NCBI GenBank assembly: GCA_002269645.1
Contig: NIVC01001187.1
Coordinates: forward strand, 372,001 to 436,000
Direction of reading: 5' to 3'
DNA: 64,000 bases
Source: Macrostomum lignano
Lineage: Eukaryota
The stretch's first letter is position 1. Each line of letters begins with the position of its first letter. The notes under the pieces are model-generated. The model made no database searches and was not told the DNA's origin. It saw only the letters and a list, made by a program, of their open reading frames with translations. Below, piece after piece: positions 965-64,000 of this stretch. Made by a program: the position numbers and the translations under genes.

Positions 965-1061
965 ATAGTCAAGTGAAGAACAGGTGAGAGAATCGCTGAG
1001 CTAACGAGCCGCTAACACATCCAACTTGCGCAAAGCAATCGTCGTCCCCCCCATCTCCCAG

Positions 1062-1958
1062 GACCGCTTCAACGTGTTCGCCCGGCTCCGCCTCGTCCAC
1101 GCCTACTCCAGCGGCCATTCGCGCCGTCAGCTGCTCCGCGTCCACCTGCTGGCCATTGCCGCCTTCGCCTACCTCAGCCTGGTGAAAACTCTGCCAGCCT
1201 GCGATGTGGAAGGCCTTCTAAGCCTGCCGGACACCTCGGACGATTACATGAACCTGCACGCGGCCGTGCTGAAGACCGTGACCTCGCTCATTCAGATTGG
1301 CCAGACTCAGCTGGTTGAGACCCTCGGCCTGCGCTACCATCACGGCCTGCTGCCCAGCCTGCTTCGCCGTGCCGTCAGCAGCATCGTTAGCAGCGGCGGC
1401 GCCGCCTCAGGCGAGTCACCGCTCACCCCGGCCAGGCTCAAGCAGGCCACCGCTATACTCAGCACGCTGTACCACATCACATCGTCTCATGATAGAATGT
1501 CGCCTTCGCCCAGCCTGCTGGATCCGCTACTGCAGCTGGTGCAGTGGCAGGCCGCTCCGGACAACTGGCTGGGCCTGTGCATCCGGTCTGTCCGGGTGCT
1601 GGACTGCCTGTGCAACTTGGCGGCCAGCCAGGCCCGCCTGCCCGGAGTCCTGTTCTCCGCCCTGCTCGGCCGGCTGCAGGCCGAACTGCAGCTGCAGCAG
1701 CAACAGCCGGCCAACTGCCTGCAGAAGCTGGGCCTATTGAAACGCCTGCTTCATCTGCTCAAACGGCTGGTTACTGAGCCGGACTTTGCCGATTCTGTTC
1801 GACGCACCGTGGACTCCGGACAGCTGCTCCGGCTGGTCCGCTGCCTGCTGGACTGCGCGCCAGCCCTGCGCTTTGCCGGCGCCGACCTGCTCGCCGCCTA
1901 CATTCAGCACGAGCCTTCGTCACTGTCCGCCATGCAGGAGAGCGGCATCACTGATCAG
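1062..1958 (+). CDS. HUWE1: HUWE1 exon (N-terminal ARM region, DUF908/DUF913)
   Basis: tctcccag|GACCGC ... GATCAG|gtgaga. [16 protein letters not shown] and [19 protein letters not shown] resemble HUWE1 (LLFTHIRLAHGFS; FQEPSLLSSLQDNGLTD). The 5' boundary is somewhat uncertain. Confidence 0.85.
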
Positions 1959-4900
1959 GTGAGAACTTCGGCAGATTTTGTTGGGTTGGAAATTTTCATA
2001 ATTTCTGGCTATACCTGTGTGAAAGTCAAATTAGCGAGATTTTTTAATTAATAAAATTCTAATGAGGATCATAAAACTTTATACACCATTCTTACAAAAC
2101 AAATCTTTTCATAGGGAATAGGAAGAGATCTTAGGGTTAATTTCAGAGTAAGACATGTACATTAATCCCAAGAGTGGGACATGTACACTAATCTCAGGGT
2201 GAGACCTGTACACTTATCTCAGGGTGAGACCTGTACACTTATCTCAGGGTGAGGCCTGTACACTTATCTCAGGGTGAGGCCTGTACCATGTACATTAATC
2301 TCAGGGTGAGACCTGTACATTAATCTCAGGCTGAGACCTGTAAGCTAATCTCAGGGTGAGACCTGTACAATTATCTCAGGGTGAGACCTGTACATTAATC
2401 TCAGGCTGAGACCTGTAAGCTAATCTCAGGGTGAGACCTGTACATTAATCTCAGAGTGAGGCCTGTACATTAATCTCTGGGTGAGACCTGTACATTAATC
2501 TCAGGCTGAGACCTGTAAGCTAATCTCAGGGTGAGACCTGTACATTAATCTCAGAGTGAGGCCTGTACATTAATCTCTGGGTGAGACCTGTACATTAGTC
2601 TCAGGGGGAGACCTGTACATTAATCTCAGGGTGAGACCTGTACATTAATCTCAGGGTGAGACGCACATTCGTCTCAGAGTGAGACCTGTACATTAGTCTC
2701 AGAGTGAGGCCTGTACATTAATCTCAGGGTGAGACCTGTACATTCGTCTCAGAGTGAGACGCACATTCGTCTCAGAGTGAGACCTGTACATTAATCTCAG
2801 GGTGAGACCTGTACATTAATCTCAGGCTGAGACCTGTAAGCTAATCTCAGGGTGAGACCTGTACATTAATCTCAGAGTGAGGCCTGTACATTAATCTCAG
2901 GGTGAGACCTGTACATTAATCTCAGAGTGAGGCCTGTACATTAATCTCAGGGTGAGACCTGTACATTAATCTCAGGGTGAGACCTGTACATTAATCTCAG
3001 AGTGAGGCCTGTACATTAATCTCAGGGTGAGACCTGTACATTAATCTCAGGGTGAGACCTGTACATTAATCTCAGAGTGAGACGCACATTCGTCTCAGAG
3101 TGAGACCTGTACATTAGTCTCAGAGTGAGACCTGTACATTAATCTCAGGGTGAGACCTGTACATTAATCTCAGGCTGAGACCTGTAAGCTAATCTCAGGG
3201 TGAGACCTGTACATTAATCTCAGAGTGAGGCCTGTACATTAATCTCAGGGTGAGACCTGTACATTAATCTCAGGCTGAGACCTGTACATTAATCTCAGAG
3301 TGAGGCCTGTACATTAATCTCAGGGTGAGACCTGTACATTAATCTCAGGGTGAGACCTGTACATTAATCTCAGAGTGAGACGCACATTCGTCTCAGAGTG
3401 AGACCTGTACATTAGTCTCAGAGTGAGGCCTGTACATTAATCTCAGGGTGAGACCTGTACATTCGTCTCAGAGTGAGACGCACATTCGTCTCAGAGTGAG
3501 ACCTGTACATTAGTCTCAGAGTGAGACCTGTACACTAATCTCAGGATGAGACCTGTACATTAGTCTCAGAGTGAGACCTGTACATTAATCTCAGGATGAG
3601 ACCTGCTTATTGCTCTTAAATGACAAGTTTCCATGCGCTAGCATGTAGTTTCAGGGTAAGAACTCAGACAGTCGCCTATGTCACCCAATCCAGGTGCTGG
3701 ACTCGCTGAAGGTGCCTCAGCACCGGGACCTGTTGCTGAACCTGCCACCGATCCTGGCCGCCCTGTCGCTGAACCAGCGCGGCGCCGACGCAGTCCTTCG
3801 TCGCGGCGTCCTCCAGCAGCTGGTGTCGATATTCGCCGATCCGGCCTACCTGCCAGCGCTGACCGCCAAGAAGTCCATGCAGCCGGCCGCCATGCTAGGC
3901 AGCCTGGCCTCCGAGGTTGTCCGCAACGACCAGCGCCTGAAGGACGCCGTTGTTGAAGCCGTCAAGGACTCCCTCACCCGCCTGGTCGAAGAGGCCAAGG
4001 CATCCGCTGCCGCCGCCGCCGCCGCCGCCGCCTCTGCAACGGCTTCCGCGGCCAAGTCGACCGCCTCGCAGGACGACGCGTCCGGCGGCGGCTCGTCCGG
4101 TCCGGACGAAGACGTCGTCATGCAGGACGCTTCGTTCGCCTCGTCGGTCTCCACCGGAGGCGCCGGCAGCAGCGGCAACGGCGCCGCTGGTACGTCGAAC
4201 GTTGGCGCCAATGCTACCACCGGCGGCGCCGCCGCTGCGGCCTCCAGCGACCCCGGCGCGGCGTCGAACCGCGCCAGCCGGCTGCTCGTGTTCGCGCAGT
4301 CAATGGTGTACCGCACCGCCATCGAGCGGGCTGACAGTCAGATCGCCGCCGGCTCGGTTGACTCCGCCGCATCCCGCGCTCTGGTCGACGCCGGTGTCCT
4401 GCCGCTGCTGCTGGAGCTGGCCGCCCAGCTTCGCCCCGCTGAGCCCGCCATCGGTCACGTGGCCACCTTCATCCGGCTGCTCGTGATGGCTGACGCCGAT
4501 CCTGAGCAGATGGTGTCCACTCTGCTCAGCCTCATCAACGATCAGCTTCCGTCCGAGTGCAACCCGCGCTCAGCGGCCATCTGCAGCCTGCTGGAGCGGC
4601 TGGTCAGCATCAGGGAGCTGAGATCCTCCAGCCTGGCCAGGTTTGCCGGCGCCCAGCCGCTGCTAAAGAAGCTGCTGTACCAGCTGTACCGCACTGCGGC
4701 CTGGCAGTGCGCGGAGGCTGCGCACCAGGTGCGTGGAACTCCCTTTACCGATTCCCGCATGATCCCATCATCGAGATCTCCCACGGTTTTCCTTGTAGCT
4801 TCTCAAAGCTTATAGTGTTTGCCTCATCTCTTATCCCTAAATCCCGTCGCGCATCTCTAAGCATCCTCCCGTCCCAATGCTGCTGATCCCCTTCCCCCAT

Positions 4901-7900
4901 CCCAATGCCGCTGATCCCCATCCCAGATCCCAATTCTGCTGATCCCCTTATCTGATCCCAATGCCGCTGATCCCCATCCCAGTTCCCAATTCTGCTGATC
5001 CCCTTCTCTGATCCCAATGCCGCTGATCCCCATCCCAGATCCCAATGCCGCTGATCCCCATCCCAGATCCCAATGCCGCTGATCCCCATCCCAGATCCCA
5101 ATGCCGCTGATCCCCATCCCAGATCCCAATGCCTCTGATCCCCATCCCAGATCCCAATGCGGCTAATCTCCATCCCTGATCCCAATGCGGCTGATCCCCA
5201 TCCCTGATCCCAATGCCGCTGATCCCCTTCCCAGATCCCAATGCCGCTGATCCCCATTCCCGATCCCAATGCCGCTGATCCCCATCCCAGATCCCAATGC
5301 CTCTGATCCCCATCCCAGATCCCAATGCCGCTGATCCCCGTCCCAGAACCCGATGCCGCTGATCCCCGTCGCAGATCCCGATGCCGCTGATCCCCAATCC
5401 CAGATCCCAAAATCCCATCGCCTATCTTAAGATCTCCCTAATGATCCAAATCGATATTTTAATCCCTAAATACCACACAATACACATCCCATTTTTAAAA
5501 AAATCCTCACTATCCCCTGGATTGGATATTTGCATCTTGATAACTCATACCCGTCCACAAATTCATCTCAATGTCCAACCTACCCAATTCCCCGCAACCC
5601 CGCCAGATGGACGTAGACACGTGCGACACCCTGTCCCAGCTGGGACTGGACGGAGTCTGCGAGCCGGCCTGCAAGAAGCCGAAGCAGGCCGCACTGCTCG
5701 ACCCAGAGCAGCTGGCCTGTCGGCAGGCTGTGAGCGCCAGCGTTCGATCAATCTTTGCCGCCCTGTTCAAGCTGTGCACGGCCGGGTCCAGGTCGCTCTA
5801 CACCGGTTCCCAGATGTCGCTGGACAACTGCAAGACTATCGTGCACACCTTTCAGGATCTGTTTGCCATGGAGGGCGCCGAGGGCAAGGACCCGAAGGTG
5901 AGGCTTTCTGTGAGAAAACTGGGACATTCAAAATGTAGCTATAGCCATTGGGTCATTCGAGCTAGTCGTGACGTCATTCATTGTAGCCATTGGGTCATTC
6001 GAGCTAGTCGTGACGTCATTAATTGTAGTCATTGGGTCATTCGAGCTAGTCGTGACGTCATTCACTGTAGCCATCAGGTCATTCGAGCTAGTCGTGACGT
6101 CATTCACTGTAGCCATCAGGTCATTCGAGCTAGTCGTGACGTCATTCACTGTAGCCATCAGGTCATTCGAGCTAGTCGTGACGTCATTCACTGTAGTCAT
6201 CGGGTCATTCGAGCTAGTCGTGACGTCATTCACTGTAGTCATCAGGTCATTCGAGCTAGTCGTGACGTCATTAATTGTAGTCATTGGGTCATTCGAGCTA
6301 GTCGTGACGTCATTCACAGTAGTCATCAGGTCATTCGAGCTAGTCGTGACGTCATTCACTGTAGCCATCAGGTCATTCGAGCTAGTCGTGACGTCATTCA
6401 CTGTAGCCATCAGGTCATTCGAGCTAGTCGTGACGTCATTCACTGTAGCCATCAGGTCATTCGAGCTAGTCGTGACGTCATTAATTGTAGTCATTGGGTC
6501 ATTCGAGCTAGTCGTGACGTCATTCACTGTAGCCATCAGGTCATTCGAGCTAGTCGTGACGTCATTCACTGTAGCCATCAGGTCATTCGAGCTAGTCGTG
6601 ACGTCATTCACTGTAGTCATCGGGTCATTCGAGCTAGTCGTGACGTCATTCACTGTAGTCATCAGGTCATTCGAGCTAGTCGTGACGTCATTCACTGTAG
6701 TCACCAGGTCATAGAAGCTAGTCATGACGTTATTAATTTAAGTCGTAGTCATTCCCTGCTGTCATAGGGTCATTGCCTTTTGTCATGCGGTCATTCCCTG
6801 TTCTCACAGTGTCACTCCCTGTAATTCGTTAATACTGGCATTGTCATTCACTGAAGTCATGCAGTCGCATTGAATCTCTCTGCCTTCCACCCTCCCGTAG
6901 GTGACCTGCCGGACTGCCAACGCCTTCCTGCAGCTGTTCTGCGGCCTCCAGCCGGACCGCCTGCCGCCTGACATCGCCAACTTCCTGGTATTCGAAGGCA
7001 TCTCTACCGTGGGCGCCTTCATGTCGCTGCTGCCCCGGGCGATCAATCAGGGCTTCGCCGACGAGGCTCTCGTGGAGTCCTGGCTGGCCTGGACGCAGCG
7101 CTTCGCCGCCAACTACAAAACTGACGACGGCAGCCGGCTGGAGGATCGCCTGCTGCCCGCCTTGATGCCGCTGTGGAACCGCCTGCCAGCCAAGGAGCTG
7201 CTGTCCGAGACCGGGGCCTGCAACCTGCTGTCCATTATGCGCCAGCTGCTGGCCTGGTGGTCCGCCGAGCCGGACATGGTTGAGCCGCCTATGCTGCTAG
7301 CGGATGGTAAGCAGCAGTCTGGCGGCGCCAGCGGCTCCGGTGCCGGCACCTCGGCTGGGGCCGGCGCCACCGGCAACAGCGACAACCAGAGCGTCCGCCG
7401 GCTCATGGAGATGGGCTTCTCCCGCCGGCTCTGTGTTGAAGTGCTTCGGGTGGCCACGAACTTTGAGGAGGCCGTTGACACCCTGGTCCGTCGCCAGGGT
7501 GAGGAGCAGCTGCTCGGCGCCGATCTGCTTTCGCCGGACGACGACGCCAGCGAGGCCGCCGACGACGACGGCGAGGCTGGCGATGGAGGCGCCGCCGGTG
7601 GCGCCGGGTTGAGTGCCGCGCAGCAGCGCCGGGCGGATTTGAAAGCTGAGTTTCTGCAGCGCCAGCTGGGGCCCGGCTGCCTGAAAGTGTTTCGGCATTT
7701 CAAATCCGCGCCAATCCCGCATCACGTGGCCGGAGCTCTGGCCGCCACAGGGGACTCCCAGCTCATCGATCTGGCATTTGAGGTGACTGCTCTGTAATTG
7801 GTTCATACCCATTCTACACACTGATCCCATACCCATCCCACACTGATCCCATACCCATCCCACACACTGATCCCATACATCCCACACTGACCCCATACCC

Positions 7901-10900
7901 ATCCCACACACTGACCTCATACCCATCCCACACACTGACCCCATACCCATCCCACACACTGATCCCATACCCACCCCACACACTGATCCCATACCCACCC
8001 CACACACTGATCCCATACCCATCCCATACACTGATACAATACCCACCCCACACACTGATCCCATACTCATCCCACACACTGACCCCATACCCATCCCACA
8101 CACTGATCCCATACCCACCCCACACACTGATCCCATACCCACCCCACACACTGATCCCATACCCATCCCATACACTGATACAATACCCACCCCACACACT
8201 GATCCCATACTCATCCCACACACTGACCCCATACCCATCTCACACAAATCCCATACCTATCCCACATACTGATCCCATACCCATCCCACACACTGATCCC
8301 ATACCCATCTCACACAAATCCCATACCTATCCCACACACTGATCCCATACCCATCCCACACACTGATCCCATACCCATCCCACACACTGATCCCATACCA
8401 ATCTCACACAAATCCCATACCCATCCCACACACTGATCCCATACCCATCCCACACACTGATCCCATACCCATCTCACACAAATCCCATACCCATCCCACA
8501 CACTGATCCCATACCCATCCCACACACTGATCCCATACCCATCCCACACACTGATCCCATACCCATCCCACACACTGACCCCATACCCATCTCACTGACC
8601 CCAAGTTCCACAACAGCAACTCCGAGCGCCAGTTTCCAAGCTAAATATGCTTTTATTAATCCCCACCCCAGGCCGCCTTCTCGGACTTCCCGGCCAGCTG
8701 CCGGGACCAGCCCCGCCTGCTGCAGCTGGTGCTGCTGCTCTGCCACCGCTGCAAGCTCTCCTGCGCACAGCAGGCCGTCAAGCACCGCCTGCTGCCGCTC
8801 TGCTACCAGGCCCTGATGCGCCAGTCGTCCTCCGCCGAGTCTGCGGCCGCCTTCGACAGTCTCTGCCTGCTGGTTGACGCGCACGAGCGCCTCGCCGCCG
8901 CTGGCCAACTTCGCCGGCGCGTCCTCGAGCGAACCGCCCGTCTGTCCTCCTGGGCCGCGCTGGACGAGCGCATCGGAGTCTGGGAGCCGCTGGCCGCCGA
9001 GCCCAACGCCTCGCTAGACCGAGCCTGGCGGGACGGCCGGTACATGTGCCGATTTCCTCAGCTGGTTGGCCGCCGGGTTGCCATGCTGACTCTGCCGGCT
9101 CAGTTCACTGAGAACTCTGGCAGGCCGCTGATGCTGAGCCTCACGGAGTCTTCGGCTGACAATTCTGCCGCCGCTGCCGCCGATGCTCAGCCGCTGCTTG
9201 AGCCGATGTCGCCTGCCGAACGGGATAGCCTTGCCAGGTTCGACTGGAAACTCTTTTTCCCTATTAAATCTCCCAATCTAAATCCAGAAATTCCTCCCCA
9301 GATACAGAAAATCCTTAATCTTAATATCAGAATCCCCTTCCGCAAACCTGAGAAATCCTCAATCCGAAACGGAATTCCCTTCCCCAAACCTGAGAAATCC
9401 TCGATCCGAAACGGAATTCCCTTCCGCAAACCTGAAAAACATTAATCCCAACAAAAATCCCCATGTCAATTTGCCCGTTTCCAGACAGCTGCTCTCCACC
9501 ATTCGGCCTGGCGCCGGCGCCTCTCGCCTTGAAGCCGCTCTCCAGCTTCTCATCCGCCTCATCTGCTCCGATCCCGGCCTGGCAGCCGAGCTGTGCTGCT
9601 CAGCCGGCCTGGCCGATCGCCTGCTGGCTCTGGCCGGCCAGGGAGCCGGGGTGCAGCACCTGTGCTGCCTGGCGCTGCACGCCGTCTTCCAGGACGCCGA
9701 TGCCGTCGCCTATGCCGCTTCGAACCTCGTTCGGCGCCATCTGCACTACGGCGCGCCAAGCTCGCGCCTGCTAGGCGTGTCCGGCCGGTCGCAAGGCGCC
9801 AAAAATTTGCACTACCTGCTAGCCGTGCTGACCCCGGCTCTGTTCAGGGCCTACGAGCCCACCTGCGATGCCGTGCGCCAGCTGGCCTCGCTTGCCATCG
9901 ACAGTGCCGCTCTGCGGGAGGGGGGCACCCAGCGACTGATGTACCAGGTGTGTGCAGACGCATACGAAATATTCTTTTTGCCACAATCAGAGAGTATCTT
10001 CGTAAAACCTCTTATACTCACTCTATCTTCTGTGAGAATCTTCCTTAAGGTCCATCGTAAATTGCTTATACCCTGAGAGCCACCCTAGTACCCTAAAAAC
10101 CTCTCCTCTCCAGTACCTTAAGAGCCGCCCGAATACCCTGAGATCCGCCCCAATACCCTGTGAACCACCAGAATACCCTCTGATCTTGATCTTGATCGTG
10201 AACCTTGACCTCAAATACCCTGAGAACCTTAAATACCCTGAGAACCTTGACCTCAAATACCCTGAGAACCTTGACCTCAAATACCCTGAGAACCTTGACC
10301 TCAAATACCCTGAGAACCTTGATCTCAACTACCCTGAGAACCTTCACCTCAACTACCCTAAAAACCTTGATCCCAAATACCCTGAGGACTTTGACCTCAA
10401 ATACACTGAGAACCTTGATCTCAAATACCCTGAGAACCTTAAATACCCTGAGAACCTTAAATACCCTGAGAACCTTGATCTCAACTACCCTGAGAACCTT
10501 GATCTCAACTACCCTGAGAACCTTGACCTCAAATACCCTGAGAACCTTGACCTCAAATACCCTGAGAACCTTGACCTCAAATACCCTGAGAACCTTGATC
10601 TCAACTACCCTGAGAACCTTCACCTCAACTACCCTAAAAACCTTGATCCCAAATACCCTGAGGACTTTGACCTCAAATACACTGAGAACCTTGATCTCAA
10701 ATACCCTGAGAACCTTAAATACCCTGAGAACCTTAAATACCCTGAGAACCTTGATCTCAACTACCCTGAGAACCTTGATCTCAACTACCCTGAGAACCTT
10801 GATCTCAACTACCCTGAGAACCTTGGTCTCAAATACCCTGAGAACCTTGGTCTCAACTACCCTGAGAACCTTGGTCTCAACTACCCTGAGAACCTTGGTC

Positions 10901-13900
10901 TCAACTACCCTGAGAACCTTGGTCTCAAACACCCTGAGAACCTTGGTCTCAAATACCCTGAGAACCTTGATCTCAACTACCCTGAGAACCTTGATTCCAT
11001 ATAACCTGAGAACCTTGACCTCAAATACACTGAGAACCTTGATCTCAAATACCCTGAGAACCTTAAATACCCTGAGAACCTTAAGTACCCTGAGAACCTT
11101 GATCTCAACTACCCTGAGAACCTTGATCTCAACTACCCTGAGAACCTTGATCTCAACTACCCTGAGAACCTTGATCTCAACTACCCTGAGAACCTTGGTC
11201 TCAAATACCCTGAGAACCTTGGTCTCAACTACCCTGAGAACCTTGGTCTCAACTACCCTGAGAACCTTGGTCTCAACTACCTTGAGAACCTTGGTCTCAA
11301 ACACCCTGAGAACCTTGGTCTCAAATACCCTGAGAACCTTGGTCTCAAATACCCTGAGAACCTTGGTCTCAACTACCCTGAGAACCTTGGTCTCAACTAC
11401 CCTGAGAACCTTAAATACCCTGAGAACCTTGGTCTCAAATACCCTGAGAACCTTGGTCTCAAATACCCTGAGAACCTTGATCTCAAATACCCTGAGAACC
11501 TTGATCCCAAATACCCTGAGAACCTTGATCCCAAATACCCTGAGAACCTTGATCTCAACTACCCTGAGAACCTTGATCTCAACTACGTTGAGAACCTTGA
11601 TCTCAAATACCCTGAGAACCTTGATCTCAAATACCCTGAGAACCTTGGTCTCAACTACCCTGAGAACCTTGGTCTCAACTACCCTGAGAACATTGGTCTC
11701 AACTACCTTGAGAACCTTGGTCTCAACTACCCTGAGAACATTGGTCTCAACTACCTTGAGAACCTTGGTCTCAAACACCCTGAGAACCTTGGTCTCAAAT
11801 ACCCTGAGAACCTTGGTCTCAACTACCCTGAGAACCTTGGTCTCAACTACCCTGAGAACCTTAAATACCCTGAGAACCTTGGTCTCAAATACCCTGAGAA
11901 CCTTGGTCTCAACTACCCTGAGAACCTTGATCTCAACTACCCTGAGAACCTTGATCCCAAATACCCTGAGAACCTTGATCCCAAATACCCTGAGAACCTT
12001 GATCCCAAATACCCTGAGAACCTTGATCTCAACTACCCTGAGAACCTTGATCTCAACTACCCCGAGAACCTCCCTAATGAAGTCCCACAATCGCCCAGCC
12101 AAGAACTCGCCGCCGCAGTGTTCCAACCCTCCCGCCAACCGCAGACGCAGGAGCGAAGTTCCGCGCCCAAGGAGCAAAGCCCTCCGCCCCTGCGCGACTG
12201 GCAGACCAGCCTGCTGTCAATGCTACTCGATGCCGTGCTTCTCGACCAGCCCGCGGCGAGCCTGGCCGCCGCCTTCCAGCAGTCGCCCCCTAGCAACCGC
12301 TCCGACACTAGCAGCGACGAATCCGCGCCGGACGCTGCCGCTGGTGGCGACGCGGCCTCCGATGCAAAACAGCAGACCACCTGTCGGAAGTTTGCTCTCG
12401 CCCTGCTAATTGATTTGGCCAGGTAAACTTTGCACCCTGTGTGAGCGTGTGCAGGAGTCTGTGCCTGTGTACTGTGTACTGCATCACTGCCGAATCCCCG
12501 CTCCCCAACTGGCAGGTGCTACTCGGTGGTCGCCAGCCACCTGCTCCGCCAGCCATGTCTGTCTCGCATTATTGACCGATTCGCCGTGCAGAACCGCTGC
12601 GACTCTGTTGAGCACGGGCTCAGCTTCTGCCTGTTAACTGAGGCCATCAACGCCTGCCCGAACGATGCCGACATTATCAACGGCCTGGTGACCGAAATTC
12701 GATCCGCTCTTCATCGAGCCGTCCATCTGGCCGACCCGGACGCCAGGTGCACGGCCCTGTTCAGCCTGGTGAATCTGGTGCAGCTGATGGCCACGCCGAT
12801 CGCCCGGACAGCCCAGCGCCGCGGCCTCCTGGCCGATCTGGTCCGCCTGCCTCTGGCCATCGACAGCGGCGTCAAGGCCGGCCGGGAGCTGCTCTGCCAC
12901 CTGCTGACCGCCCTGCACCTGCTGTGCGACCTGTGCCAGGAGGATCCGCGCCGCAAGGACACCGGCTATCACGCCTTCGACGGCTATCACGAGCTGCTGC
13001 TTGGCGACCCGGCACTGGCCAATCACCTGCTGCTGCGCTACTCAGACGGCCACTCCGATGTCTCCAGCAGCCTGTTCGGCCTGCTAGGCGAGCGCCGGCC
13101 CTACGGCCAGGCCCGGGCGGGTAACTTCATTGCCGAGCACCACCTTGGCGGCGCCGCCTTGTCCCACTCCGACAACCGGCACATGGTTGCCCTTGGCAAC
13201 GACGACGACGAAGAGGAAGTGGAAGAAGACGATGAGGAAGAGGAGGAAGCTGTGAACGCCCAGCCGCAGGAGGCTGAGCAGCAGCAGCAGGACGATCGTC
13301 CGGACACTCCAGCCGTGAACCCTCTTTCAGCTGCCGAGCCGCAGCCTGCAGCTGAAGCTCCAGCTTCGTCGTCTCAGTTTTCGGCGCGCCCGCCGACTCT
13401 GGAGCCGCCGCCGGTAGCCGCGGCTACCAACGCCGCCGCCCACGAGGCCACCGCCAATTTCGACAACGCTCTGCAATCGATCGCTGATCGTTTGAACGTC
13501 CTGGAGGCCGCCGCTACCGCCAGCGACGATGCGCTTGCCGCGGAGAACAACGACGGAGGTGAAGACCAAGGCGAGCCGGCCAATGCCGTCATCGGCGCTG
13601 CTGCAGCTGGCGGCGACGCGCAAGCCGAGGACGATGACAATCTGATGATCGAAGACGATGAAGATGACGAGGATGAGGAGGAAGACGAAGAGGAGGAGCA
13701 CGATGAAGACGAGGAGGAAGACGAGGAGGAGGAAGAGGAGATGATGGACGCTGACGGCGGGGCGGAGCTGTCTGTGCCGGAGAGCGAGGACGACACGGAC
13801 GAGGACGAGCGGCTGGGTGACCTGGTGCGGGTGCAGCTCGGCGAGCTGGGCGAAGACGACGACTTGAGCAACGATTTAGAAGCCGTGTTCCAGCTGGCCG

Positions 13901-16900
13901 GCGGGGGCGGCGGCGCCGGCGGCCACCTGGACATCCGTGAGCGGCTGGCCGGGCCGCGCCTGAACTACCTGCAGATGCGCAACTACCGCAACCCCATGCT
14001 CATGCCGTATGGCGCCTTCCGCACTCGGCACGCCGGGCATCGGGCCGGCCGCGTTGGCGCCGGTGGAAACGCCGCCGCCGCCGCTGCCGCTGTCAGTTCG
14101 GACGCCGCGTCGCCGTACAATTTGTTCGGCTCCGCATTCGCTGACGGCTCAGACCAGCTGAGCCAGACCGCCAGGTGGCGAGGCACCCTGCAGCATCCGC
14201 TGCTGATGAGCAGTTCCGATGGTGCTGCAGGCGGCGCAGGCGGCGGCGGTCAGAACTCGCCGGATCACGAGGGCGCCATCTTACACTACGTGAACCCGGA
14301 CCGGCCGCCGCTGGTTCGCAGCAACGCTATTCGGCACGGCTCGCACGAGGCCCTGGCCAGCATGGAGCGGCTCACAGCCGAGTCTGGCGGAGACTACCCT
14401 GTGCACCAGCTGATGCGGGAGATGTCCAACCAGCAGCAGCGGCCGGACCTCATGTACCGCTGGGCTGAGCTGGTCCGCCTGCTGTCTGGCAGGGAGCTCG
14501 GCGACCTGCTCTGTCTAGCCAGGATCGAGGTAGCCACGGCGCTAGAGGCCGAGCGGCGAACCGAGTTGGAGTCGCGCCGGGCCGAGCTGGCTAAGCAGCA
14601 GACGGCCAAGCAGCAGCAGCAGCGGGCCAGGGAGATTGAAGCCGCCGCGGCCGCGGCAGCCGCCTCATCTGGCTCTGATGCTCAGCAGGAAGAGGAGCAG
14701 CAGCAGCAGCAGCAGCTCGAAGCCACCGCGGCAGAAGAACCCGACGAAGAAGAAGAGTTGGCTGCAGCAGCAGAAGCCGCCGAGGTGCCCAACATTGCAG
14801 AGGAGGAGGCTCCTGAGGAGCAGGCGGCAGCGGCTACTGCGCAAGCTGGCTCAGTGGAAGAGGCCGCACCGCAGCAGCCTCAGTCCCAGCCGCCTCCGCT
14901 CGTGCCCATCGTTGCCGAGCCGCCGCCGCCACCGCCGCCGCCTCCACCTCCATCGCAGCCGGCTGTTGAAGAAGTTCCCGAAGAAGAAGCGCCTCCAGCC
15001 CCCGTTCCTATGGAAACAGATGCGGACTCGGGTGGCTCGCAACAGCAGCAGCGGCAGCAGCTCGAGGACGAAGCTGCGGACGAGGAGCTAGTAGATGCTA
15101 TCGCCGCGGCCGCCGTTGCCGCAGCAACTACTGACGCCGCGGCCGCCGTTGCCGCTGCTGACGAAGGCGGCGCGTCTGGTGGTGGCAGACAAGCGGAGGC
15201 TTCCGCCGCTGCGGCCGGCGCCACCGCCGGTCCGTCCAGTTCATCGGAGTCCGCCAACTACCTGTTTAACGACGTTGATCCTGCCTTCCTGGAGGCCCTG
15301 CCCGAAGAGCTCCGCCAGGAGATCATCGCCGAGCAGCTGCGGCTTCGTCGACTTCAACAGCAGACGGGAGCGGCAGATCTCAATCCGGAGTTTCTGGCAG
15401 CTCTGCCGCCCAGCATTGCCGAAGAGGTGCTGCAGCAGGTGAGAGAGAATTTTGAGTTTCATCTTCTTGAGTGGCTACTATCCAGTCTCAGTAGTGTGTG
15501 GGTATATTCTGACATTGCCGTATTTTCATGCCTGCCAGGTGAACCGCGAGCAGGCCGGGCCAACCAGCAGCTCGGCCGCCCAGCCAGACGAGGCCATCGA
15601 CCCCAATGCCTTCCTGGCCACGCTGACCCCGGCGCTGCGCCGCGAGGTGCTTTCAGAGATGGACGACGCCACCATCGCCGCCCTGCCTGCCGATCTGGCC
15701 GCCGAGGCCAGAGCTCTGCGACGCCAGCAGCAGCAGCAACAACAGCAGCAACAACAGCAGCAGCAGCAGCTGCATCATCATCACCAGCTTGATCACGAAG
15801 ACTGGCCGCGATTCCCACCGCGCTATCGAGAGCGGGCCAACGCCACGGCCGCCAGCTACTACCGGGTGCTGTACAACCTGCCCGCCAGGCCCGCACAGCC
15901 TCTTGGCGTCGGCGGCAGCGCTACAATCCGGCGCGCAATCGGCGGCGGCTCCTCCAGCAGCGGGGCTGGCGGCGGCTCAGGCGGCGGCTCGAGCGGCAAG
16001 CCGAAGCCGCTAGTCGACTGCGAGTCTCTGACTGTCTGCGTGGCCCTGCTGTGCTGCGACAGCGACGTTGTCCGCCAGGGCTGCCGGATGCTGCTGCACC
16101 GCCTGGCCGCGCACCCGCCCACCCGCCTCTGGCTGGCCAAGGCCCTGCTCGCCATCATCGCCTCAGCCGAGACCGTCCAGCAGCAGCAGCTTCTCGACGC
16201 CCCAGCCGCTGCCACAGTTGGCGGCCTGAACTGCCTGCTGGATCTGCGGTTTCGCGGCCAGTTCGGCCAGCCGCAGCGGATCTTCGCACTGCCCCGGCCG
16301 CCTCCTGGCGTCAAGCTGCGCTCCCCGCCCACGCTCTGCCTGCACCCAGACGCCTGCCCAGTGGTCTTGCGCGCCTGCCTGCAGTCCCTCACCGAGCTGG
16401 CCGAGACCGAAGAAGCCGCCTTCCTCAGCCCCTACGGCCCGTCTGAGTCGGCTGCGCCAGCCGACACCGGCGAGTTCTGGAGGCTGCTCCGCCATCTGGA
16501 CGGCGGCAGCATCGGTGTAGCCTCGCCCGGTGCCGCTCCCGGCGGCGCCTCCGCCTCGGCTTCGTCGGCGTCAGCTGCGGCTTCGGCGTCAAACGCGGCG
16601 GCAAGCTCGGCGCCGTCAGCCGACCAGGAGGACCTGTTCCCCTCGGTGTTCCAGCTGCTCAGCCATCCGCTCATCTGTCGCCGGGCCGAGCTGCTGGACC
16701 AGCTGCTTGAACTGCTCGTCATCTGCGATAGCATGGCTCGCGACCACATGACCCGGTTGGCCAGGCCGCCCCGACCCCAGCAGCAGCCACCGCCGCCTCC
16801 ACCGCCGCCGCCGCCGCAGGAGCAATCACAACAGCAGCAGCAGCAAGAAGAAGAAACCCAGCAGCAGCAGCAGCAGCAGCAGAGCCAGGCGTCGTCTCAG

Positions 16901-25483: not shown

Positions 25484-49832
<24,349 letters not shown>

Positions 49833-54632: not shown

Positions 54633-55629
54633 CGCCGAACCCTCCAAATTCTGTAAAGTTGAATTGGACTTCTTTAAGCTCTTCAAGTTGCTATAAAAGT
54701 CCAGAAGCAGACAGATCCAAGAATTCTGAAAACGCCATGATGTTGAGCACATTAAAGCTACGTGACAAGTCTGTAGAGATGATTCCGCATGTTTTCAACA
54801 AGATTGATTATGTCTGCCGCAAATCGGCCAGCCTGGCTTGTCATCTGCATTATATTTGTTTTAATCAGTAATTCAAAAACTAGTAAATAATTAATTAGGG
54901 ATCGGATTAAGGGAGGGAGAGTTAAAAAAACAAACAGAAGTGAACCTTGAGGCAAATAAGGCCAAGGCAGGGCATGTACAACAGGCGAGTCGAAGCGGCA
55001 TGTCGGTCTGAGTTCAAACAGAAGTGGAGAATGAGCTGCGAGTAGCAGATGATGGGGTGGTGCAGGCTTCTCTCGTGTTAGGGAAGGTCACTCTTAGTTC
55101 ACTCCGGTACGTGTACGTGCTGACAGCTGCTAAAAATTACTGCGAGTAGTTAAAACAAAAACAAAAATAAATAAATCAAACACACGATAAAAAGCGGAAA
55201 GGAAAATCTGTATTAGCTACTCATAGTATAGTAATAGTTTTATTCGCGTAGAGAACGAACTAGTTTATCGCATGGGTATCTACTGCTAGTATAAAATTTG
55301 TCTAAGCGAGAGACTTCAGTCACGGATGACATGGAGCAAACCAACAGTTATAAGAAAACGATTTTGTCAGTAGTATGGTGCGACTGTTTCACTGAAATTG
55401 TACTGTAAATAAAGCAAATCTGTGTCTAGTTTTGTTAAAGTACATCTGAGGCGCCAATTTTCGTATCGAGTAGCAGGGTTATTCCCGTGTCTGGAGGGCA
55501 GGAGAGGGAGCAATCAAAAGGAGGTTTTGCTTTGAATTCAACAAAGGCTACAAAATCTAATTTTTGTCCCTAATTCGGAAGCTGCTAAAAATAATTAGGA
55601 ATCGTAGGGGTGCCATAGAAAACAGTGAA

Positions 55630-56132
55630 ACCAGCCAATTAGGGGTGGGTGGCTTAGAACCAGCTAATCAGAAGCCGAAGGGGTGGGTGGCTCAGAACCA
55701 GCCAATCAGAAGCCAAAGGGTATACGGGTGACTCAGAACCAGCCAATCAGAAGTCGAATGGTATGTGGGGTGACTCAGAACCAGCCAATCAGAAGCCGAA
55801 GGGTATACGGGTGACTCAGAACCAGCCAATCAGAAGCCGAAGGGTATGTGGGGTGACTCAGAACCAGCCAATCAGAAACTGAAGGGTATACGGGTGACTC
55901 AGAACCAGCCAATCAGAAACTGAAGGGTATGTTGGGGTGACTCAGAACCAGCCAATCAGAAGCCGAAGGGTATACGGGTGACTCAGAACCAGCCAATCAG
56001 AAACTGAAGGGTATACGGGTGACTCAGAATCAGCCAATTAGAAGCCGAAGGGTATACGGGGTGACTCAGAACCAGCCAATCAGAAACTGAAGGGTATGTT
56101 GGGATGACTCAGAACCAGCCAATCAGAAGCCG
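55630..56132. repeat. 41-42 bp repeat GGGTGACTCAGAACCAGCCAATCAGAAGCCGAAGGGTATAC in NCX 3'UTR
   Basis: ~12 copies; the last copy overlaps the NCX stop codon. Confidence 0.95.
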
Positions 56133-56499
56133 TCAATGTAGCAATAATTCTCAAGCGAGGACACTAGAATGTAGGTGCCCCAGAGGCTGAAGAAGGCCAT
56201 GGCGGTGGCTATCTTGGCTGGCCGGGGGCCGCCCAGCTCCCCGCCGATGGGCTTGAGGCGGCGCAGCAGCATGATGATGACGGCCAGGAAGGCCTCGGCG
56301 CAGAACAGAGTGACGGAGAAGCCGAGGGAGCCGGCATGCACCGTGAACTCGCTATCGATGGACCAGTGATAGATGGCCGCGATGGACCAGGCCACACCGA
56401 TGCCAAGGAAGACGTTCACCGCGTTGCTGCCCGTCACGTTGCCCACCGAGCTGTCGGCGTAGGCGTCGCCGATGGCTGCCACCTTCGAGGCAAAAGTGT
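56123..56499 (-). CDS. NCX last coding exon
   Basis: ctcccgcag|ACACT: DTFASKVAAIGDAYADSSVGNVTGSNAVNVFLGIG...GELGGP...YCYIDGF*. Confidence 0.97.
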
Positions 56500-59400
56500 C
56501 TGCGGGAGGGGATTTTTATTAGATTATTAGAGGCAGGGGGGTTGTGTGCACCCTGGCGCACTTTAAGCGACATTGGCGCACAACCGGCGAGAGGCATTAC
56601 TGCCCATTCCGCCGACTCCCCTGAGCAGGCATACAAGCGCGCTGATACGTACGCAGGCACACACTCACACAGGAGTGTACAGCGGCCCTAACTTTATTTT
56701 AACGTTAGGCATGTACACTTCACTGCGCCTTGGGGGGTTGGCTCTCAAGGCCGTTAATTGCACGAGCAGAGCCAAGACGAGATTCCAATTCAGCCCCAAA
56801 TTAATGTGACTGCACTTGGAATCGAGCCTGGGTCGCTGGCACACCAGAGCAGCTGCGCTACCGCTGGGCTACGGCCCCCCGCGGGAGGGGATTGTTGTTT
56901 TGAATAGTTTAGAGCACTGCTTTGAGCACTGCTTTGAGCACTGCTTTGAGCACTGCTTTGAGCACTGCTTTGAGCACTGCTTTGAGCACTGCTTTGAGCA
57001 CTGCTTTGAGCACTGCTTTGAGCACTGCTTTGAGCAATGCTTTGAGCAATGCTTTGAGCAATGCTTTGAGCACTGCTTTGAGCACTGTTTTGAGCACTGA
57101 TTTGAGCACTGCTTTGAGCACTGCTTTGAGCAATGCTTTAAGCAATGCTTTGAGCAATGCTTTGAGCACTGCTTTAGCACTGCTTTAGCACTGCTTTGAG
57201 TACTGCTTTGAGCACTGCTTTGAGCAATGCTTTGAGTACTACTTCGAGCTCTGTTTAAAGCACTACTACTTCAAAGTCAGAAGTCACACAGCTGTCACTC
57301 ACCTGGAAGGCTGGTGCCGAGAGCGACAAAGGTGATGGCTGTCACGGCGTCCGTCAGACCCACTGTGCAGCCAAAGCTGGACGCCAAGTCCCCGATGACA
57401 GCTGTGAGCATGCCGATGACCGTGATTGACACGTTGAAGCAGAGCCAGCCGCCGGCATAATCTGCGGAGCGGATTAAGGAGCAAAAGACGGACATTTCAT
57501 CGCCGCCGCAAATCAAAGGCGTGTCCATTTCGCTGACACCTGGATTCGTGCGCAGTCGCGTGCTCACACGGGGTGTACAGGGGTCCTGACTTTCTCATCA
57601 TCCACAGGCATTTCGTACTCTTTCTCTGTGCCTTCGAACCCGCGCTCGCCCCCTTTTCGTTGAAGCTTTGGACTTTGATCTTCTAACAGGAAGAAGCATG
57701 GACACAGGCACAAAAATCCCCTTTTCCCATCTCCACCCCAGCCTCCCGCCATCCTTCATCATGCATCTTAAATTGAAAAGAGAATGTAAATTCAAAACGG
57801 GAATGGCATAGCAATCGATGGTAGCCCATTGTGCCCCAACAAGGCACTCAATTCTATTATTTTATTTTTCTTTTTTCCTTCCGTTGTAAAGAGATGCAGC
57901 CGGGAGTCTGGGATATGGGGAGTCGATCCGCCTATCGATAAGCGATAAGAGCTCCGTGATGCTGGGCATGCTGGGGGGGGGTAACACAAAACAGCAATCC
58001 GAGCTCTCTCTGGCAAAAATTGATTTTTTACAAATCAAACCTTGGAATCTGCAGCATGCAATTTTAATATTCCCATCCAGACCCGGATATTCCCAGATGG
58101 CAAGCCTCATCAATGCATCTCCACAGCCCCCACTCACGCTTCGAAATCCTCACACCCTCCCCACACCCTGCTCACACCCTCATCTCACCCTCCTCTCACC
58201 CTCCTCTCACCCTCCTCATATCCCTCCTCAATATCCATCCTCACACCCTCCTCATATCCCTCCTCAATATCCATCCTCACACCCTCCTCATACGCTGCTC
58301 ACCAGTGGGAGGCACAAAAGCGAACAGCAGCTTCCAGAAGATGGTGAGGAAGTGCATGATGTAGTCTCCACAGGAGGGCAGCTTCTCTTCTCCATCACCT
58401 GTGCCGTCTCCTTCGTCCTCGTTGCCATCTCCTGAAAACGGTGGATTTTAGAAATTTGCACTCGTCCAACTCCTAGGATCAGGCCAAGAACTCGATTCGA
58501 ATGGAGTACGGACTCACCCGCGCTAACAGTGATGGCCTCAATGAACTGCTCCTTCCAGGAGGAGGTGCCCACAACCAGTGACAGGTTGGCCTTCTTCAGC
58601 ATTCTGTCTACCGTGTTCTGCAGGGGGGGGGGTTGTGGGCTTGGGGTGCTCTGACATTTTGGTACCCACGCCACACAGCCCCTCACCCACCCCACAGCCC
58701 CTCACCCACCCTACAGCCCCTCACCCACCACACAGCCCCTCACCCACCCCACAGCCCCTCACCCACCCTACAGCCCCTCACCCACCACACAGCCCCTCAC
58801 CCACCCCACAGCCCCTTACCCACCACACAGCCCCTCACCCACCCCACAGCCCCTCACCCACCACACAGCCCTCACCCACCACACAGCCCCTCACCCACCA
58901 CACAGCCCCTCACCCACCACACAGCCCCTCACCCACCACACAGCCCCTCACCCACCACACAGCCCCTCACCCACCCCACAGCCCCTCACCCACCCCACAG
59001 CCCCTCACCCACCTCACAGCCCCTCACCCACCTCACAGCCCCTCACCCACCCCACAGCCCCTCACCCACCCCACAGCCCCTCACCCACCTCACAGCCCTC
59101 ACCCACCCCACAGCCCCTCACCCACCCCACAGCCCCTCACCCACCTCACAGCCCCTCACCCACCCCACAGCCCCTCACCCACCCCACAGCCCCTCACCCA
59201 CCTCACAGCCCCTCACCCACCCCAGTCACCCACCCCAGTCACCCACCCCAGTCACCCACCCCATCACCCACCTTGAACTCCACGCTCTCCACAATGTTCA
59301 CTTTAACTCTGGTCAACTCCCCCAGCCTGGGCCGGCCGGCCATCTCAGTCTCAGCGCAGTCGACGTCCTCCTCGAGATGGGGGCCTGCGGGCGAGCGCCA

Positions 59401-63114: not shown

Positions 63115-64000
63115 GATGGAGAGTCAGATGCTCAGGATGGAGAGTCAGATGCTCAATATGAGAGTCAGATGCTCAGGATGGAGAGTCAGATGCTCAGGAT
63201 GGAGAGTCAGATGCTCAGTATGAGAGTCAGATGCTCAGTATGAGATTCAGATGCTCAATATGAGAGTCAGATGCTCAGGATGGAGAGTCAGATGCTCAAT
63301 ATGAGAGTCAGATGCTCAGTATGAGAGTCAGATGCTCAGGATGGAGAGTCAGATGCTCAGGATGGAGAGTCAGATGCTCAATATGAGAATCAGATGCTCA
63401 GTATGAGAGTCAGATGCTCAGTATGAGATTCAGATGCTCAATATGAGAGTCAGATGCTCAATATGAGAGTCAGATGCTCAGTATGAGAGTCAGATGCTCA
63501 GGATGGAGAGTCAGATGCTCAGGATGGAGAGTCAGATGCTCAGTATGAGAGTCAGATGCTCAATATGAGAGTCAGATGCTCAGGATGGAGAGTCAGATGC
63601 TCAATATGAGAGTCAGATGCTCAGTATGAGAGTCAGATGCTCAGGATGGAGAGTCAGATGCTCAGGATGGAGAGTCAGATGCTCAATATGAGAATCAGAT
63701 GCTCAGTATGAGAGTCAGATGCTCAGTATGAGATTCAGATGCTCAATATGAGAGTCAGATGCTCAATATGAGAGTCAGATGCTCAGTATGAGAGTCAGAT
63801 GCTCAGGATGGAGAGTCAGATGCTCAGGATGGAGAGTCAGATGCTCAGTATGAGAGTCAGATGCTCAATATGAGAGTCAGATGCTCAATATGAGAGTCAG
63901 ATGCTCAGGATGGAGAGTCAGATGCTCAATATGAGAGTCAGATGCTCAGTATGAGAGTCAGATGCTCAGGATGGAGAGTCAGATGCTCAGGATGGAGAGT
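63115..64000. repeat. 20-21 bp repeat GAGAGTCAGATGCT + (CAGGATG|CAATAT|CAGTAT)
   Basis: ~43 copies, truncated by window end. Confidence 0.96.

What the first reader, a model, noticed from the sequence alone, without database searches (positions are those of the whole stretch)
55630..56132. 3'UTR array amplified from the NCX stop-codon junction
Seen: on the minus strand the gene ends GAC GGC TTC TGA TTGGCTGGTTCTGAGTCA. The repeat unit is CGGCTTCTGATTGGCTGGTTCTGAGTCACCCGTATACCCTT, so the last ten coding nt including TGA are the start of the first unit. Established: NCX/SLC8 C-termini conventionally end in ...GF-stop (NCX1 YCHIKGF), so this sequence predates the array. Inference: the array arose in place by duplicating the stop-codon junction. 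This gives direction to the origin of these minisatellites: local amplification, not insertion.
Basis: partly seen in the sequence, partly recalled or inferred. Interest (0 to 1): 0.7.

Follow-up and report, generated by a model that had tools for sequence, protein, structure and literature searches.

The report
Minisatellite seeded at NCX stop codon
A 41-base tandem repeat in a flatworm (Macrostomum lignano) sodium/calcium-exchanger gene begins ten bases before the end of the coding sequence, so it was almost certainly copied from that spot; this is a tidy but ordinary example of how minisatellites are born.

Summary
On the minus strand, an intact NCX/SLC8 last exon (56499..56123) ends GAC GGC TTC TGA. 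A 41-bp array (56132..~55641, 12 copies plus a partial 13th) starts at the C of GAC, so copy 1 holds the last 10 nt of the CDS. GF-stop ends 213 of 240 homologues. The 30 nt upstream of copy 1 show no similarity to the unit. The unit occurs nowhere else in the window. Origin in place, by a tandem duplication across the stop codon followed by 2- and 4-unit block duplications, is therefore well supported. It leaves the protein unchanged.

It could not be checked against close relatives. The window is Macrostomum lignano, identified through HUWE1-like hits at 99-100% identity. The nearest reachable NCX sequences are 73-79% identical, with saturated third codon positions and no alignable 3'UTR.

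At least two groups of arrays share unit cores between distant loci.

Functionally this is most likely a neutral 3'UTR VNTR in a genome known to be repeat-rich; half of this window is tandem repeat. Low novelty, low interest.

The parts
56123..56499 (-). Last coding exon of an NCX/SLC8 sodium/calcium exchanger gene (AG acceptor at 56501-56500; ...LENYCYIDGF; stop TGA at 56125..56123)
   Evidence: Spliced with exons 57303-57461, 58303-58431 and 58518-58617 (all GT-AG), it gives an uninterrupted 254-aa C-terminal region. Pfam Na_Ca_ex, E=3e-24. 73-79% identical to the best homologues.
56090..56132 (-). Copy 1 of the array (43 nt), the junction copy: its first 10 nt are the last 7 coding nt plus TGA
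   Evidence: It is 98% identical to copy 5. The 30 nt upstream show no similarity to the unit.
55716..56089 (-). Copies 2-10 (41-43 nt each), the homogeneous body of the array. Two head variants (CGGCTTC, with CGACTTC in copy 10, and CAGTTTC) and two tail variants (CCCGTATACCC / CCCC(A)ACATACCC) give 83- and 167-bp higher-order periods
   Evidence: Mean copy identity is 0.935-0.936 at lags 2 and 4, against 0.884-0.885 at lags 1 and 3.
55641..55715 (-). Copies 11-12 (38 and 37 nt), diverged distal copies with a shortened tail (GCCACCCACCCCTT)
   Evidence: They are 74-85% identical to the other copies and 89% to each other.
55625..55640 (-). Partial, degenerate 13th copy (AATTGGCTGGTTTCAC) that lacks the CGGCTTCTG head; distal edge of the array
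55239..55244 (-). First canonical AATAAA downstream of the stop codon, followed by a T/GT-rich stretch; putative poly(A) signal, implying a 3'UTR of about 900 nt of which about 55% is the array
   Evidence: No AATAAA, ATTAAA or other common variant lies between 56122 and 55270. Its use is inferred, not shown.
57303..57461 (-). Penultimate NCX exon (DYAGGWLCF...ALGTSLP)
58303..58431 (-). NCX exon (…GEEKLPSCGDYIMHFLTIFWKLLFAFVPPT). Its donor GT (58302/58301) is the first base pair of another array, 58147-58302

Best explanation
A tandem duplication of about 38-41 bp arose in place in the Macrostomum lignano NCX gene. Its left breakpoint lay 10 nt inside the coding sequence and its right breakpoint about 30 nt into the 3'UTR. 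The first copy, together with the upstream exon, recreates the original sequence, so the protein (…YIDGF-stop) is unchanged and the duplication is silent at the protein level. The two-copy seed then grew to 12-13 copies by replication slippage and/or unequal exchange, partly in 2- and 4-unit blocks. Recent events involved the stop-codon end, while the distal end has decayed. The array now makes up roughly half of a 3'UTR of about 900 nt and is most likely a neutral VNTR, one of about 45 arrays that fill non-coding DNA in this window. Shown: the anatomy, the sharp boundary inside the CDS, the ancestral status of GF-stop, the uniqueness of the unit in the window, and the higher-order structure. 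Inferred: the slippage/unequal-exchange mechanism, neutrality, and inclusion in the mRNA.
For: The array and its register start at 56132, inside the CDS. GF-stop ends 213 of 240 homologues, and the C-terminus aligns without gaps. The 30 nt upstream of copy 1 match the unit tails at 4-7 of 30 positions. The unit core is found only in this array, 12 matches against 0 expected, and it shares at most 7 nt with any other array unit in the window. Copy 1 is 98% identical to copy 5; copies 1-2 are 97.6% identical to copies 5-6; identity at lags 2 and 4 exceeds that at lags 1 and 3; copies 11-12 are only 74-85% identical to the rest. The gene is intact, with GT-AG introns. The array RNA has no unusual structure, z=+1.06. 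No poly(A) hexamer occurs before 55244. The host genome is known for an unusually high fraction of simple and tandem repeats (PMC5730564), and 49.7% of this window is tandem repeat.
Against: No close orthologue or homeologue could be examined, so the pre-duplication state is not observed directly. The distal partial copy matches unit positions 10-21 rather than the unit start, which a simple L-U-U-R duplication does not predict; a later deletion of about 10 nt must be assumed. The core TTCTGATTGGCTGGTTCTGAGTCA is almost invariant in copies 1-10. That could reflect constraint rather than recency. Neutrality is assumed, not tested.
Confidence: 0.85

Rival explanations
1. The array, or a transposable element carrying it, was inserted just after the stop codon from elsewhere, and the 10-nt match to the CDS end is coincidence or microhomology at the insertion site.
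For: Some other arrays in the window do belong to unit families shared between distant loci, so units can spread in this genome. A genome-wide search for the 41-mer was not possible. A scan of JGI metagenome contigs found nothing, but that collection is not expected to hold this species.
Against: A 10-nt in-register match to the flank has a probability of about 1e-6. Microhomology at insertion sites is usually 2-6 nt. The unit is not found elsewhere in the window. A self-comparison of the window with tandem repeats masked finds no dispersed element. Nothing in the sequence around the array suggests an insertion: no target-site duplication or terminal repeat was noticed when it was read, though no inverted-repeat search was run on it.
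Confidence: 0.04
2. The array arose in place but is kept by selection as a functional element. It could be a multi-site 3'UTR module (12 repeats of a protein- or miRNA-binding core). It could instead act as DNA, as a cluster of CCAAT-box-like (AGCCAATCAG) and AP-1-like (TGACTCA) sites spaced 41 bp apart.
For: The 24-nt core TTCTGATTGGCTGGTTCTGAGTCA is invariant in 8 of copies 1-10, and variation concentrates in the head and tail. Both motifs are present in every unit of copies 1-10.
Against: Invariance over 10 young copies is expected from recent duplication alone (copies are 86-100% identical). There is no RNA structure signal. Palindromes are not significantly enriched among the window's units. 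About 45 other arrays with unrelated units occupy comparable non-coding positions. There is no conservation in the nearest relatives' 3'UTRs. No promoter context exists, because the array lies between two convergent genes.
Confidence: 0.08
3. The array pre-existed, and a deletion fused the CDS to a unit that happens to encode Gly-Phe-stop; that is, the C-terminus was recruited from the repeat.
For: Nothing specific; it is only that the direction of copying is not observed directly.
Against: The C-terminus aligns to homologues without gaps up to the last residue (LENYCYIDGF against LENYCYIEGF in P0122 and P0018). The chance that an arbitrary 9-mer encodes G-F-stop in frame at exactly the ancestral position is about 1e-4.
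Confidence: 0.01

Closest known systems
Minisatellite birth by local tandem duplication or slipped-strand mispairing (the Haber & Louis 1998 and Taylor & Breden 2000 models; cited from my own knowledge, not read here)
   Same: The unit falls in the 10-100 bp range. The array is built from pre-existing unique sequence at the locus. Interspersed variant repeats and higher-order blocks are present. One edge has decayed.
   Different: The seed straddles a stop codon, so conservation of the protein dates the seed sequence. No clear short direct repeat flanking the original unit could be identified. The proximal edge copy is young (98% identical to copy 5) rather than decayed.
3'UTR VNTRs of transporter genes, e.g. 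the 40-bp VNTR in the human SLC6A3 (DAT1) 3'UTR (own knowledge)
   Same: A unit of about 40 bp, about 10 copies, located in the 3'UTR of a solute-carrier gene.
   Different: The DAT1 VNTR lies well downstream of the stop codon and is not derived from it. Polymorphism and expression effects are documented there and are unknown here.
[quoted passage not shown]
   Same: The window matches M. lignano HUWE1-like proteins at 99-100% identity and is 49.7% tandem repeat. The NCX array is one instance of that landscape.
   Different: The papers I read give genome-wide percentages only. I found no description of individual arrays, of arrays abutting exons, or of this locus.

Membership tests
Minisatellite / VNTR | Head-to-tail tandem array with a unit of about 10-100 bp | tested here: met
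   TRF: period 41, 11.8 copies, 87% matches. 12 copies of 37-43 nt in register.
Minisatellite / VNTR | Interspersed variant repeats or higher-order structure within the array | tested here: met
   Two head and two tail variants; 83- and 167-bp periods score higher than 41 bp.
Minisatellite / VNTR | Copy-number polymorphism between individuals or haplotypes | not testable with these tools
   Only one sequence of the locus is available. No M. lignano reads or second haplotype could be reached.
3'UTR element (transcribed into the mRNA) | Lies between the stop codon and the poly(A) site in use | tested here: inconclusive
   The array starts at the stop codon. The first AATAAA is at 55244, 400 nt beyond the array, and no variant hexamer occurs inside the array. 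No transcript data were available.
Dispersed (transposon-borne or satellite-family) tandem repeat | The same unit at several unrelated loci, or embedded in a repeated element | tested here: not met
   Within the 64-kb window only: the core is unique to this array; it shares at most 7 nt with other units; no dispersed repeats appear after masking. Genome-wide status is not testable. The JGI metagenome scan was empty.
Coding tandem repeat | Repeat units are translated | tested here: not met
   Only the first 7 nt of copy 1 are coding. TGA at 56125..56123 ends the ORF at the position where homologues end.
NCX / SLC8 sodium-calcium exchanger (host gene) | Na_Ca_ex membrane domain with the GTSLPD alpha-2 repeat, and a C-terminus ending ...YC.I.GF | tested here: met
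   Pfam PF01699, E=3e-24. tblastn to 17 homologues. 3350 homologues at E<=1e-30.

The most novel reading that the evidence does not exclude
In M. lignano, minisatellites may be born preferentially at RNA-processing or translation landmarks. Here one array starts 10 nt before a stop codon, and another starts exactly at a splice-donor GT. That pattern would point to a transcription- or processing-coupled mechanism of repeat initiation, instead of arrays simply expanding until selection on exons stops them. Alternatively, the NCX array could be a selected multi-site regulatory module.
Probability: 0.05. Interest if true: 0.55.

Novelty: new member of a known kind. Interest (0 to 1): 0.15.

Why it matters
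The overlap with a conserved stop-codon junction gives rare internal proof of the direction of copying. The unit must derive from the gene, so this array arose in place. It also shows that a tandem duplication across a stop codon costs the protein nothing. This helps to explain how arrays can come right up to coding sequence in a genome where half of the local DNA is tandem repeat. It does not change the general view of how minisatellites originate, and no function is indicated. It does carry a practical warning: gene models and 3'-end mapping in M. lignano must cope with arrays that touch exon boundaries.

Tried and rejected
(1) Close orthologues. Two protein searches with the NCX C-terminus gave best hits of only 73% (last exon) and 79% (four exons). 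Their contigs L001, L002 and L003 have GF-stop but different codons, TAA stops and no array. The L003 3'UTR aligns no better than shuffles, and third codon positions are 59% identical.

(2) An exact look-up of the 119-aa last-exon ORF in public assemblies found nothing on record.

(3) A scan of JGI metagenome contigs for the 25-nt core gave 0 hits. This is uninformative for a flatworm.

(4) The first attempt to name the organism used a 656-aa HUWE1-like exon and returned nothing, because low-complexity words swamped the search. An exhaustive HMMER search with ORF 1005-2048 then identified M. lignano.

(5) Rfam and tRNA scans of the window found nothing.

(6) RNA folding of the array gave z=+1.06, no signal.

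(7) Palindromes are not significantly enriched in the units of the window's arrays (29 of 500 shuffles reach the observed sum).

(8) I considered and dropped a link to array 41541-42386. One edge copy there reads TGATTGG-N7-CTGAGTCA, but the consensus units share fewer than 8 nt.

(9) Literature searches for M. lignano minisatellites and for SRR30276812 returned nothing specific. Wasik et al. 2015 is not held.

Full report
**What is there.** On the minus strand the sequence reads ...GAG AAT TAT TGC TAC ATT GAC GGC TTC TGA TTGGCTGGTTCTGAGTCA.... The ORF ending at this TGA (56125..56123) is the last exon of a sodium/calcium exchanger. I defined the last four exons as 58518-58617, 58303-58431, 57303-57461 and 56123-56499. 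All have AG/GT borders. Spliced together they give an uninterrupted 254-residue C-terminal region ending LENYCYIDGF-stop. This region hits Pfam Na_Ca_ex at E=3e-24 and 3350 NCX homologues at E<=1e-30. The gene is real and intact at its 3' end.

**The array.** TRF finds one array at 55647..56132 with period 41, 11.8 copies and 87% matches; the 83- and 167-bp periods score higher.
- In register there are 12 copies of 37-43 nt, from 56132 down to 55641, then a partial 13th (AATTGGCTGGTT...).
- Copy 1 starts at the C of GAC, so its first ten bases, C GGC TTC TGA, are the last seven coding bases plus the stop codon.
- The 25-nt core occurs 12 times with up to 3 mismatches, only here, against 0 expected.

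**Is the junction sequence older than the array?** Yes.
- 213 of the 240 NCX homologues retrieved end in Gly-Phe.
- The window's C-terminus aligns to theirs without gaps to the last residue.
- The three relatives whose DNA I could fetch all end in GF-stop at the same position.
- The repeat register ends abruptly inside the CDS. The 30 nt upstream of copy 1 match the tails of the other units at 4-7 of 30 positions, which is the chance level.

An array brought in from elsewhere would match ten flanking bases in register with probability about 4^-10. A C-terminus recruited from a repeat would have to encode G-F-stop in frame at the ancestral position by luck, roughly 1e-4. The unit was therefore copied from the gene end. 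This is a tandem duplication whose left breakpoint lay 10 nt inside the CDS. Copy 1 plus the upstream exon restores the original sequence, so the event is silent for the protein.

**How it grew.**
- Copy identities are higher at lags 2 and 4 (0.935, 0.936) than at lags 1 and 3 (0.884, 0.885).
- Copy 1 is 98% identical to copy 5, and copies 1-2 are 97.6% identical to copies 5-6. Growth therefore included 2- and 4-unit block duplications, and recent events involved the stop-codon end.
- The distal copies 11-12 are shortened and only 74-85% identical to the rest. The 13th is a fragment lacking the CGGCTTCTG head. So the array is young and sharp at the gene end and decayed at the far end.
- Copies 2, 4, 6 and 7 carry CAGTTTCTGA, which would read Ser-Phe-stop if it were ever copied into copy 1. 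Copy 1 keeps GGC.

**Transcript context.** No AATAAA, ATTAAA or other common variant lies between the stop codon and 55270. The first AATAAA is at 55244 and is followed by a T/GT-rich stretch. I infer a 3'UTR of about 900 nt, with the array making up about 55% of it. This is not shown by data. The array RNA has no unusual predicted structure (z=+1.06).

**Whose genome.**
- The best NCX hits were only 73-79% identical.
- An exhaustive HMMER search with the HUWE1-like ORF 1005-2048 returned UniRef proteins of Macrostomum lignano at 99%, 99%, 95% and 80% identity, with everything else near 30%. By tblastn they match the window at up to 100%.
[quoted passage not shown] It is a hidden polyploid with a recent whole-genome duplication (PMC10468722).
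- The window also holds a HUWE1-like gene (DUF908, DUF913, UBA, UBM), a stomatin-like gene (Band_7) and a cNMP-binding ORF, all on the plus strand. NCX converges on the cNMP-binding ORF tail to tail.

- Orthologue or paralogue alignment was not possible at a useful distance. L003 (79% aa, a spliced transcript contig) ends GAG GGA TTC TAA GCTGCAG. L001 and L002 (73%) end GGC TTC TAA and GGC TTT TAA. None has an array. The L003 3'UTR aligns to ours no better than shuffles, and third codon positions are only 59% identical. Formally these relatives lack the 'GGC TTC TGA TTGG' junction, but at this divergence that says nothing.
- The genome-wide search for the 41-mer was not possible. The unit is absent from the rest of the window and from JGI metagenome contigs.

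**The generalisation fails.**
- The window is 49.7% tandem repeat, with about 45 arrays.
- The NCX unit shares at most 7 nt with any other unit.
- Other arrays do share cores. Arrays 30667-31587 and 63119-64000 share 15 nt (TGAGAGTCAGATGCT). Array 32341-32505 shares 10-11 nt of the same core with each of them. Arrays 4872, 37981 and 48111 share a 10-11-nt CCCAGATCC-type core.
- 19 unit pairs share at least 9 nt, against 3.8 expected. The two 15-nt matches exceed all 100 shuffles.
- These related arrays share no flanking sequence; a self-BLAST of the window with tandem repeats masked finds nothing.

Some unit families are therefore dispersed or convergent, and local birth from unique sequence is not the only process.

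**Function.** I found nothing that requires one.
- The core TTCTGATTGGCTGGTTCTGAGTCA is nearly invariant in copies 1-10. On the plus strand it carries an AP-1-like TGACTCA and a CCAAT-box-like AGCCAATCAG.
- Young copies are expected to be alike in any case.
- Palindromes are not significantly enriched in the window's units.
- The location, between two convergent genes, is not promoter-like.

I put selected function at about 8%.

**Verdict.** This is a correct and careful observation. The in-place origin of this one array is well supported by internal evidence (confidence 0.85), though unconfirmed by comparison with close relatives. Its kind is well known: a neutral 3'UTR minisatellite in a repeat-rich genome. 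Novelty: a new member of a known kind. Interest: 0.15.

Noticed in passing
window 1-64000: 49.7% of the window is tandem repeat, in about 45 arrays with mostly unrelated 8-47-bp units. Most introns of the HUWE1-like and NCX genes hold one 'private' array that fills much of the intron. For example, array 7804-8603 fills about 90% of the intron that starts at the donor near 7784 and begins 20 nt after that donor.
   Followed up: partly
window 58147-58302 (minus strand): An 11-bp array (GGGTGTGAGGA-like) begins exactly at the GT (58302/58301) of the splice donor of NCX exon 58303-58431. Many of its units contain GTGAG, so they are potential cryptic donors. This is a second array abutting a functional junction.
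   Followed up: partly
window 5942-6734 (plus strand): A 42-bp array (14 codons) is open in frame within ORF 5571-6767 of the HUWE1-like gene. It aligns to repeated residues of the UniRef M. lignano models P0243 and P0244. Either it is a coding minisatellite, or those gene models read through an intronic array.
   Followed up: partly
window 30667-31587, 32341-32505, 63119-64000; also 4872-5410, 37981-38463, 48111-48623: Arrays at distant loci share unit cores: up to 15 nt of TGAGAGTCAGATGCT in the first group, and a 10-11-nt CCCAGATCC-type core in the second. They share no flanking sequence. They are dispersed or convergent unit families of unknown origin.
   Followed up: partly
window 1005-16000 (plus strand): The HUWE1-like E3 ligase gene (DUF908, DUF913, UBA, UBM) is very divergent. 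Outside Macrostomum, the best hits to ORF 1005-2048 are about 30% identical. A 656-aa stretch of the large exon 12445-15789, rich in Ala/Glu/Gln runs, found no homologue in the word-indexed search.
   Followed up: partly
window 26793-28669 and 46141-47832: There are very long microsatellites: (TTAG)n of about 340 copies merging into (AGTC)n-type 8-mers, and (AGTT)n of about 280 copies.
   Followed up: no
window 55716-56089 (copies 2, 4, 6, 7): The head variant CAGTTTCTGA would encode Ser-Phe-stop. Gene conversion of this variant into copy 1 would replace the conserved C-terminal Gly. Copy 1 retains GGC.
   Followed up: no
window 41541-41618: One edge copy of the 30-bp array in the stomatin-like gene reads ATGATTGGGTCAGTGCTGAGTCAG. 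It resembles the NCX unit core (TGATTGG-N6-CTGAGTCA), but the array consensus does not, so this is probably chance.
   Followed up: yes
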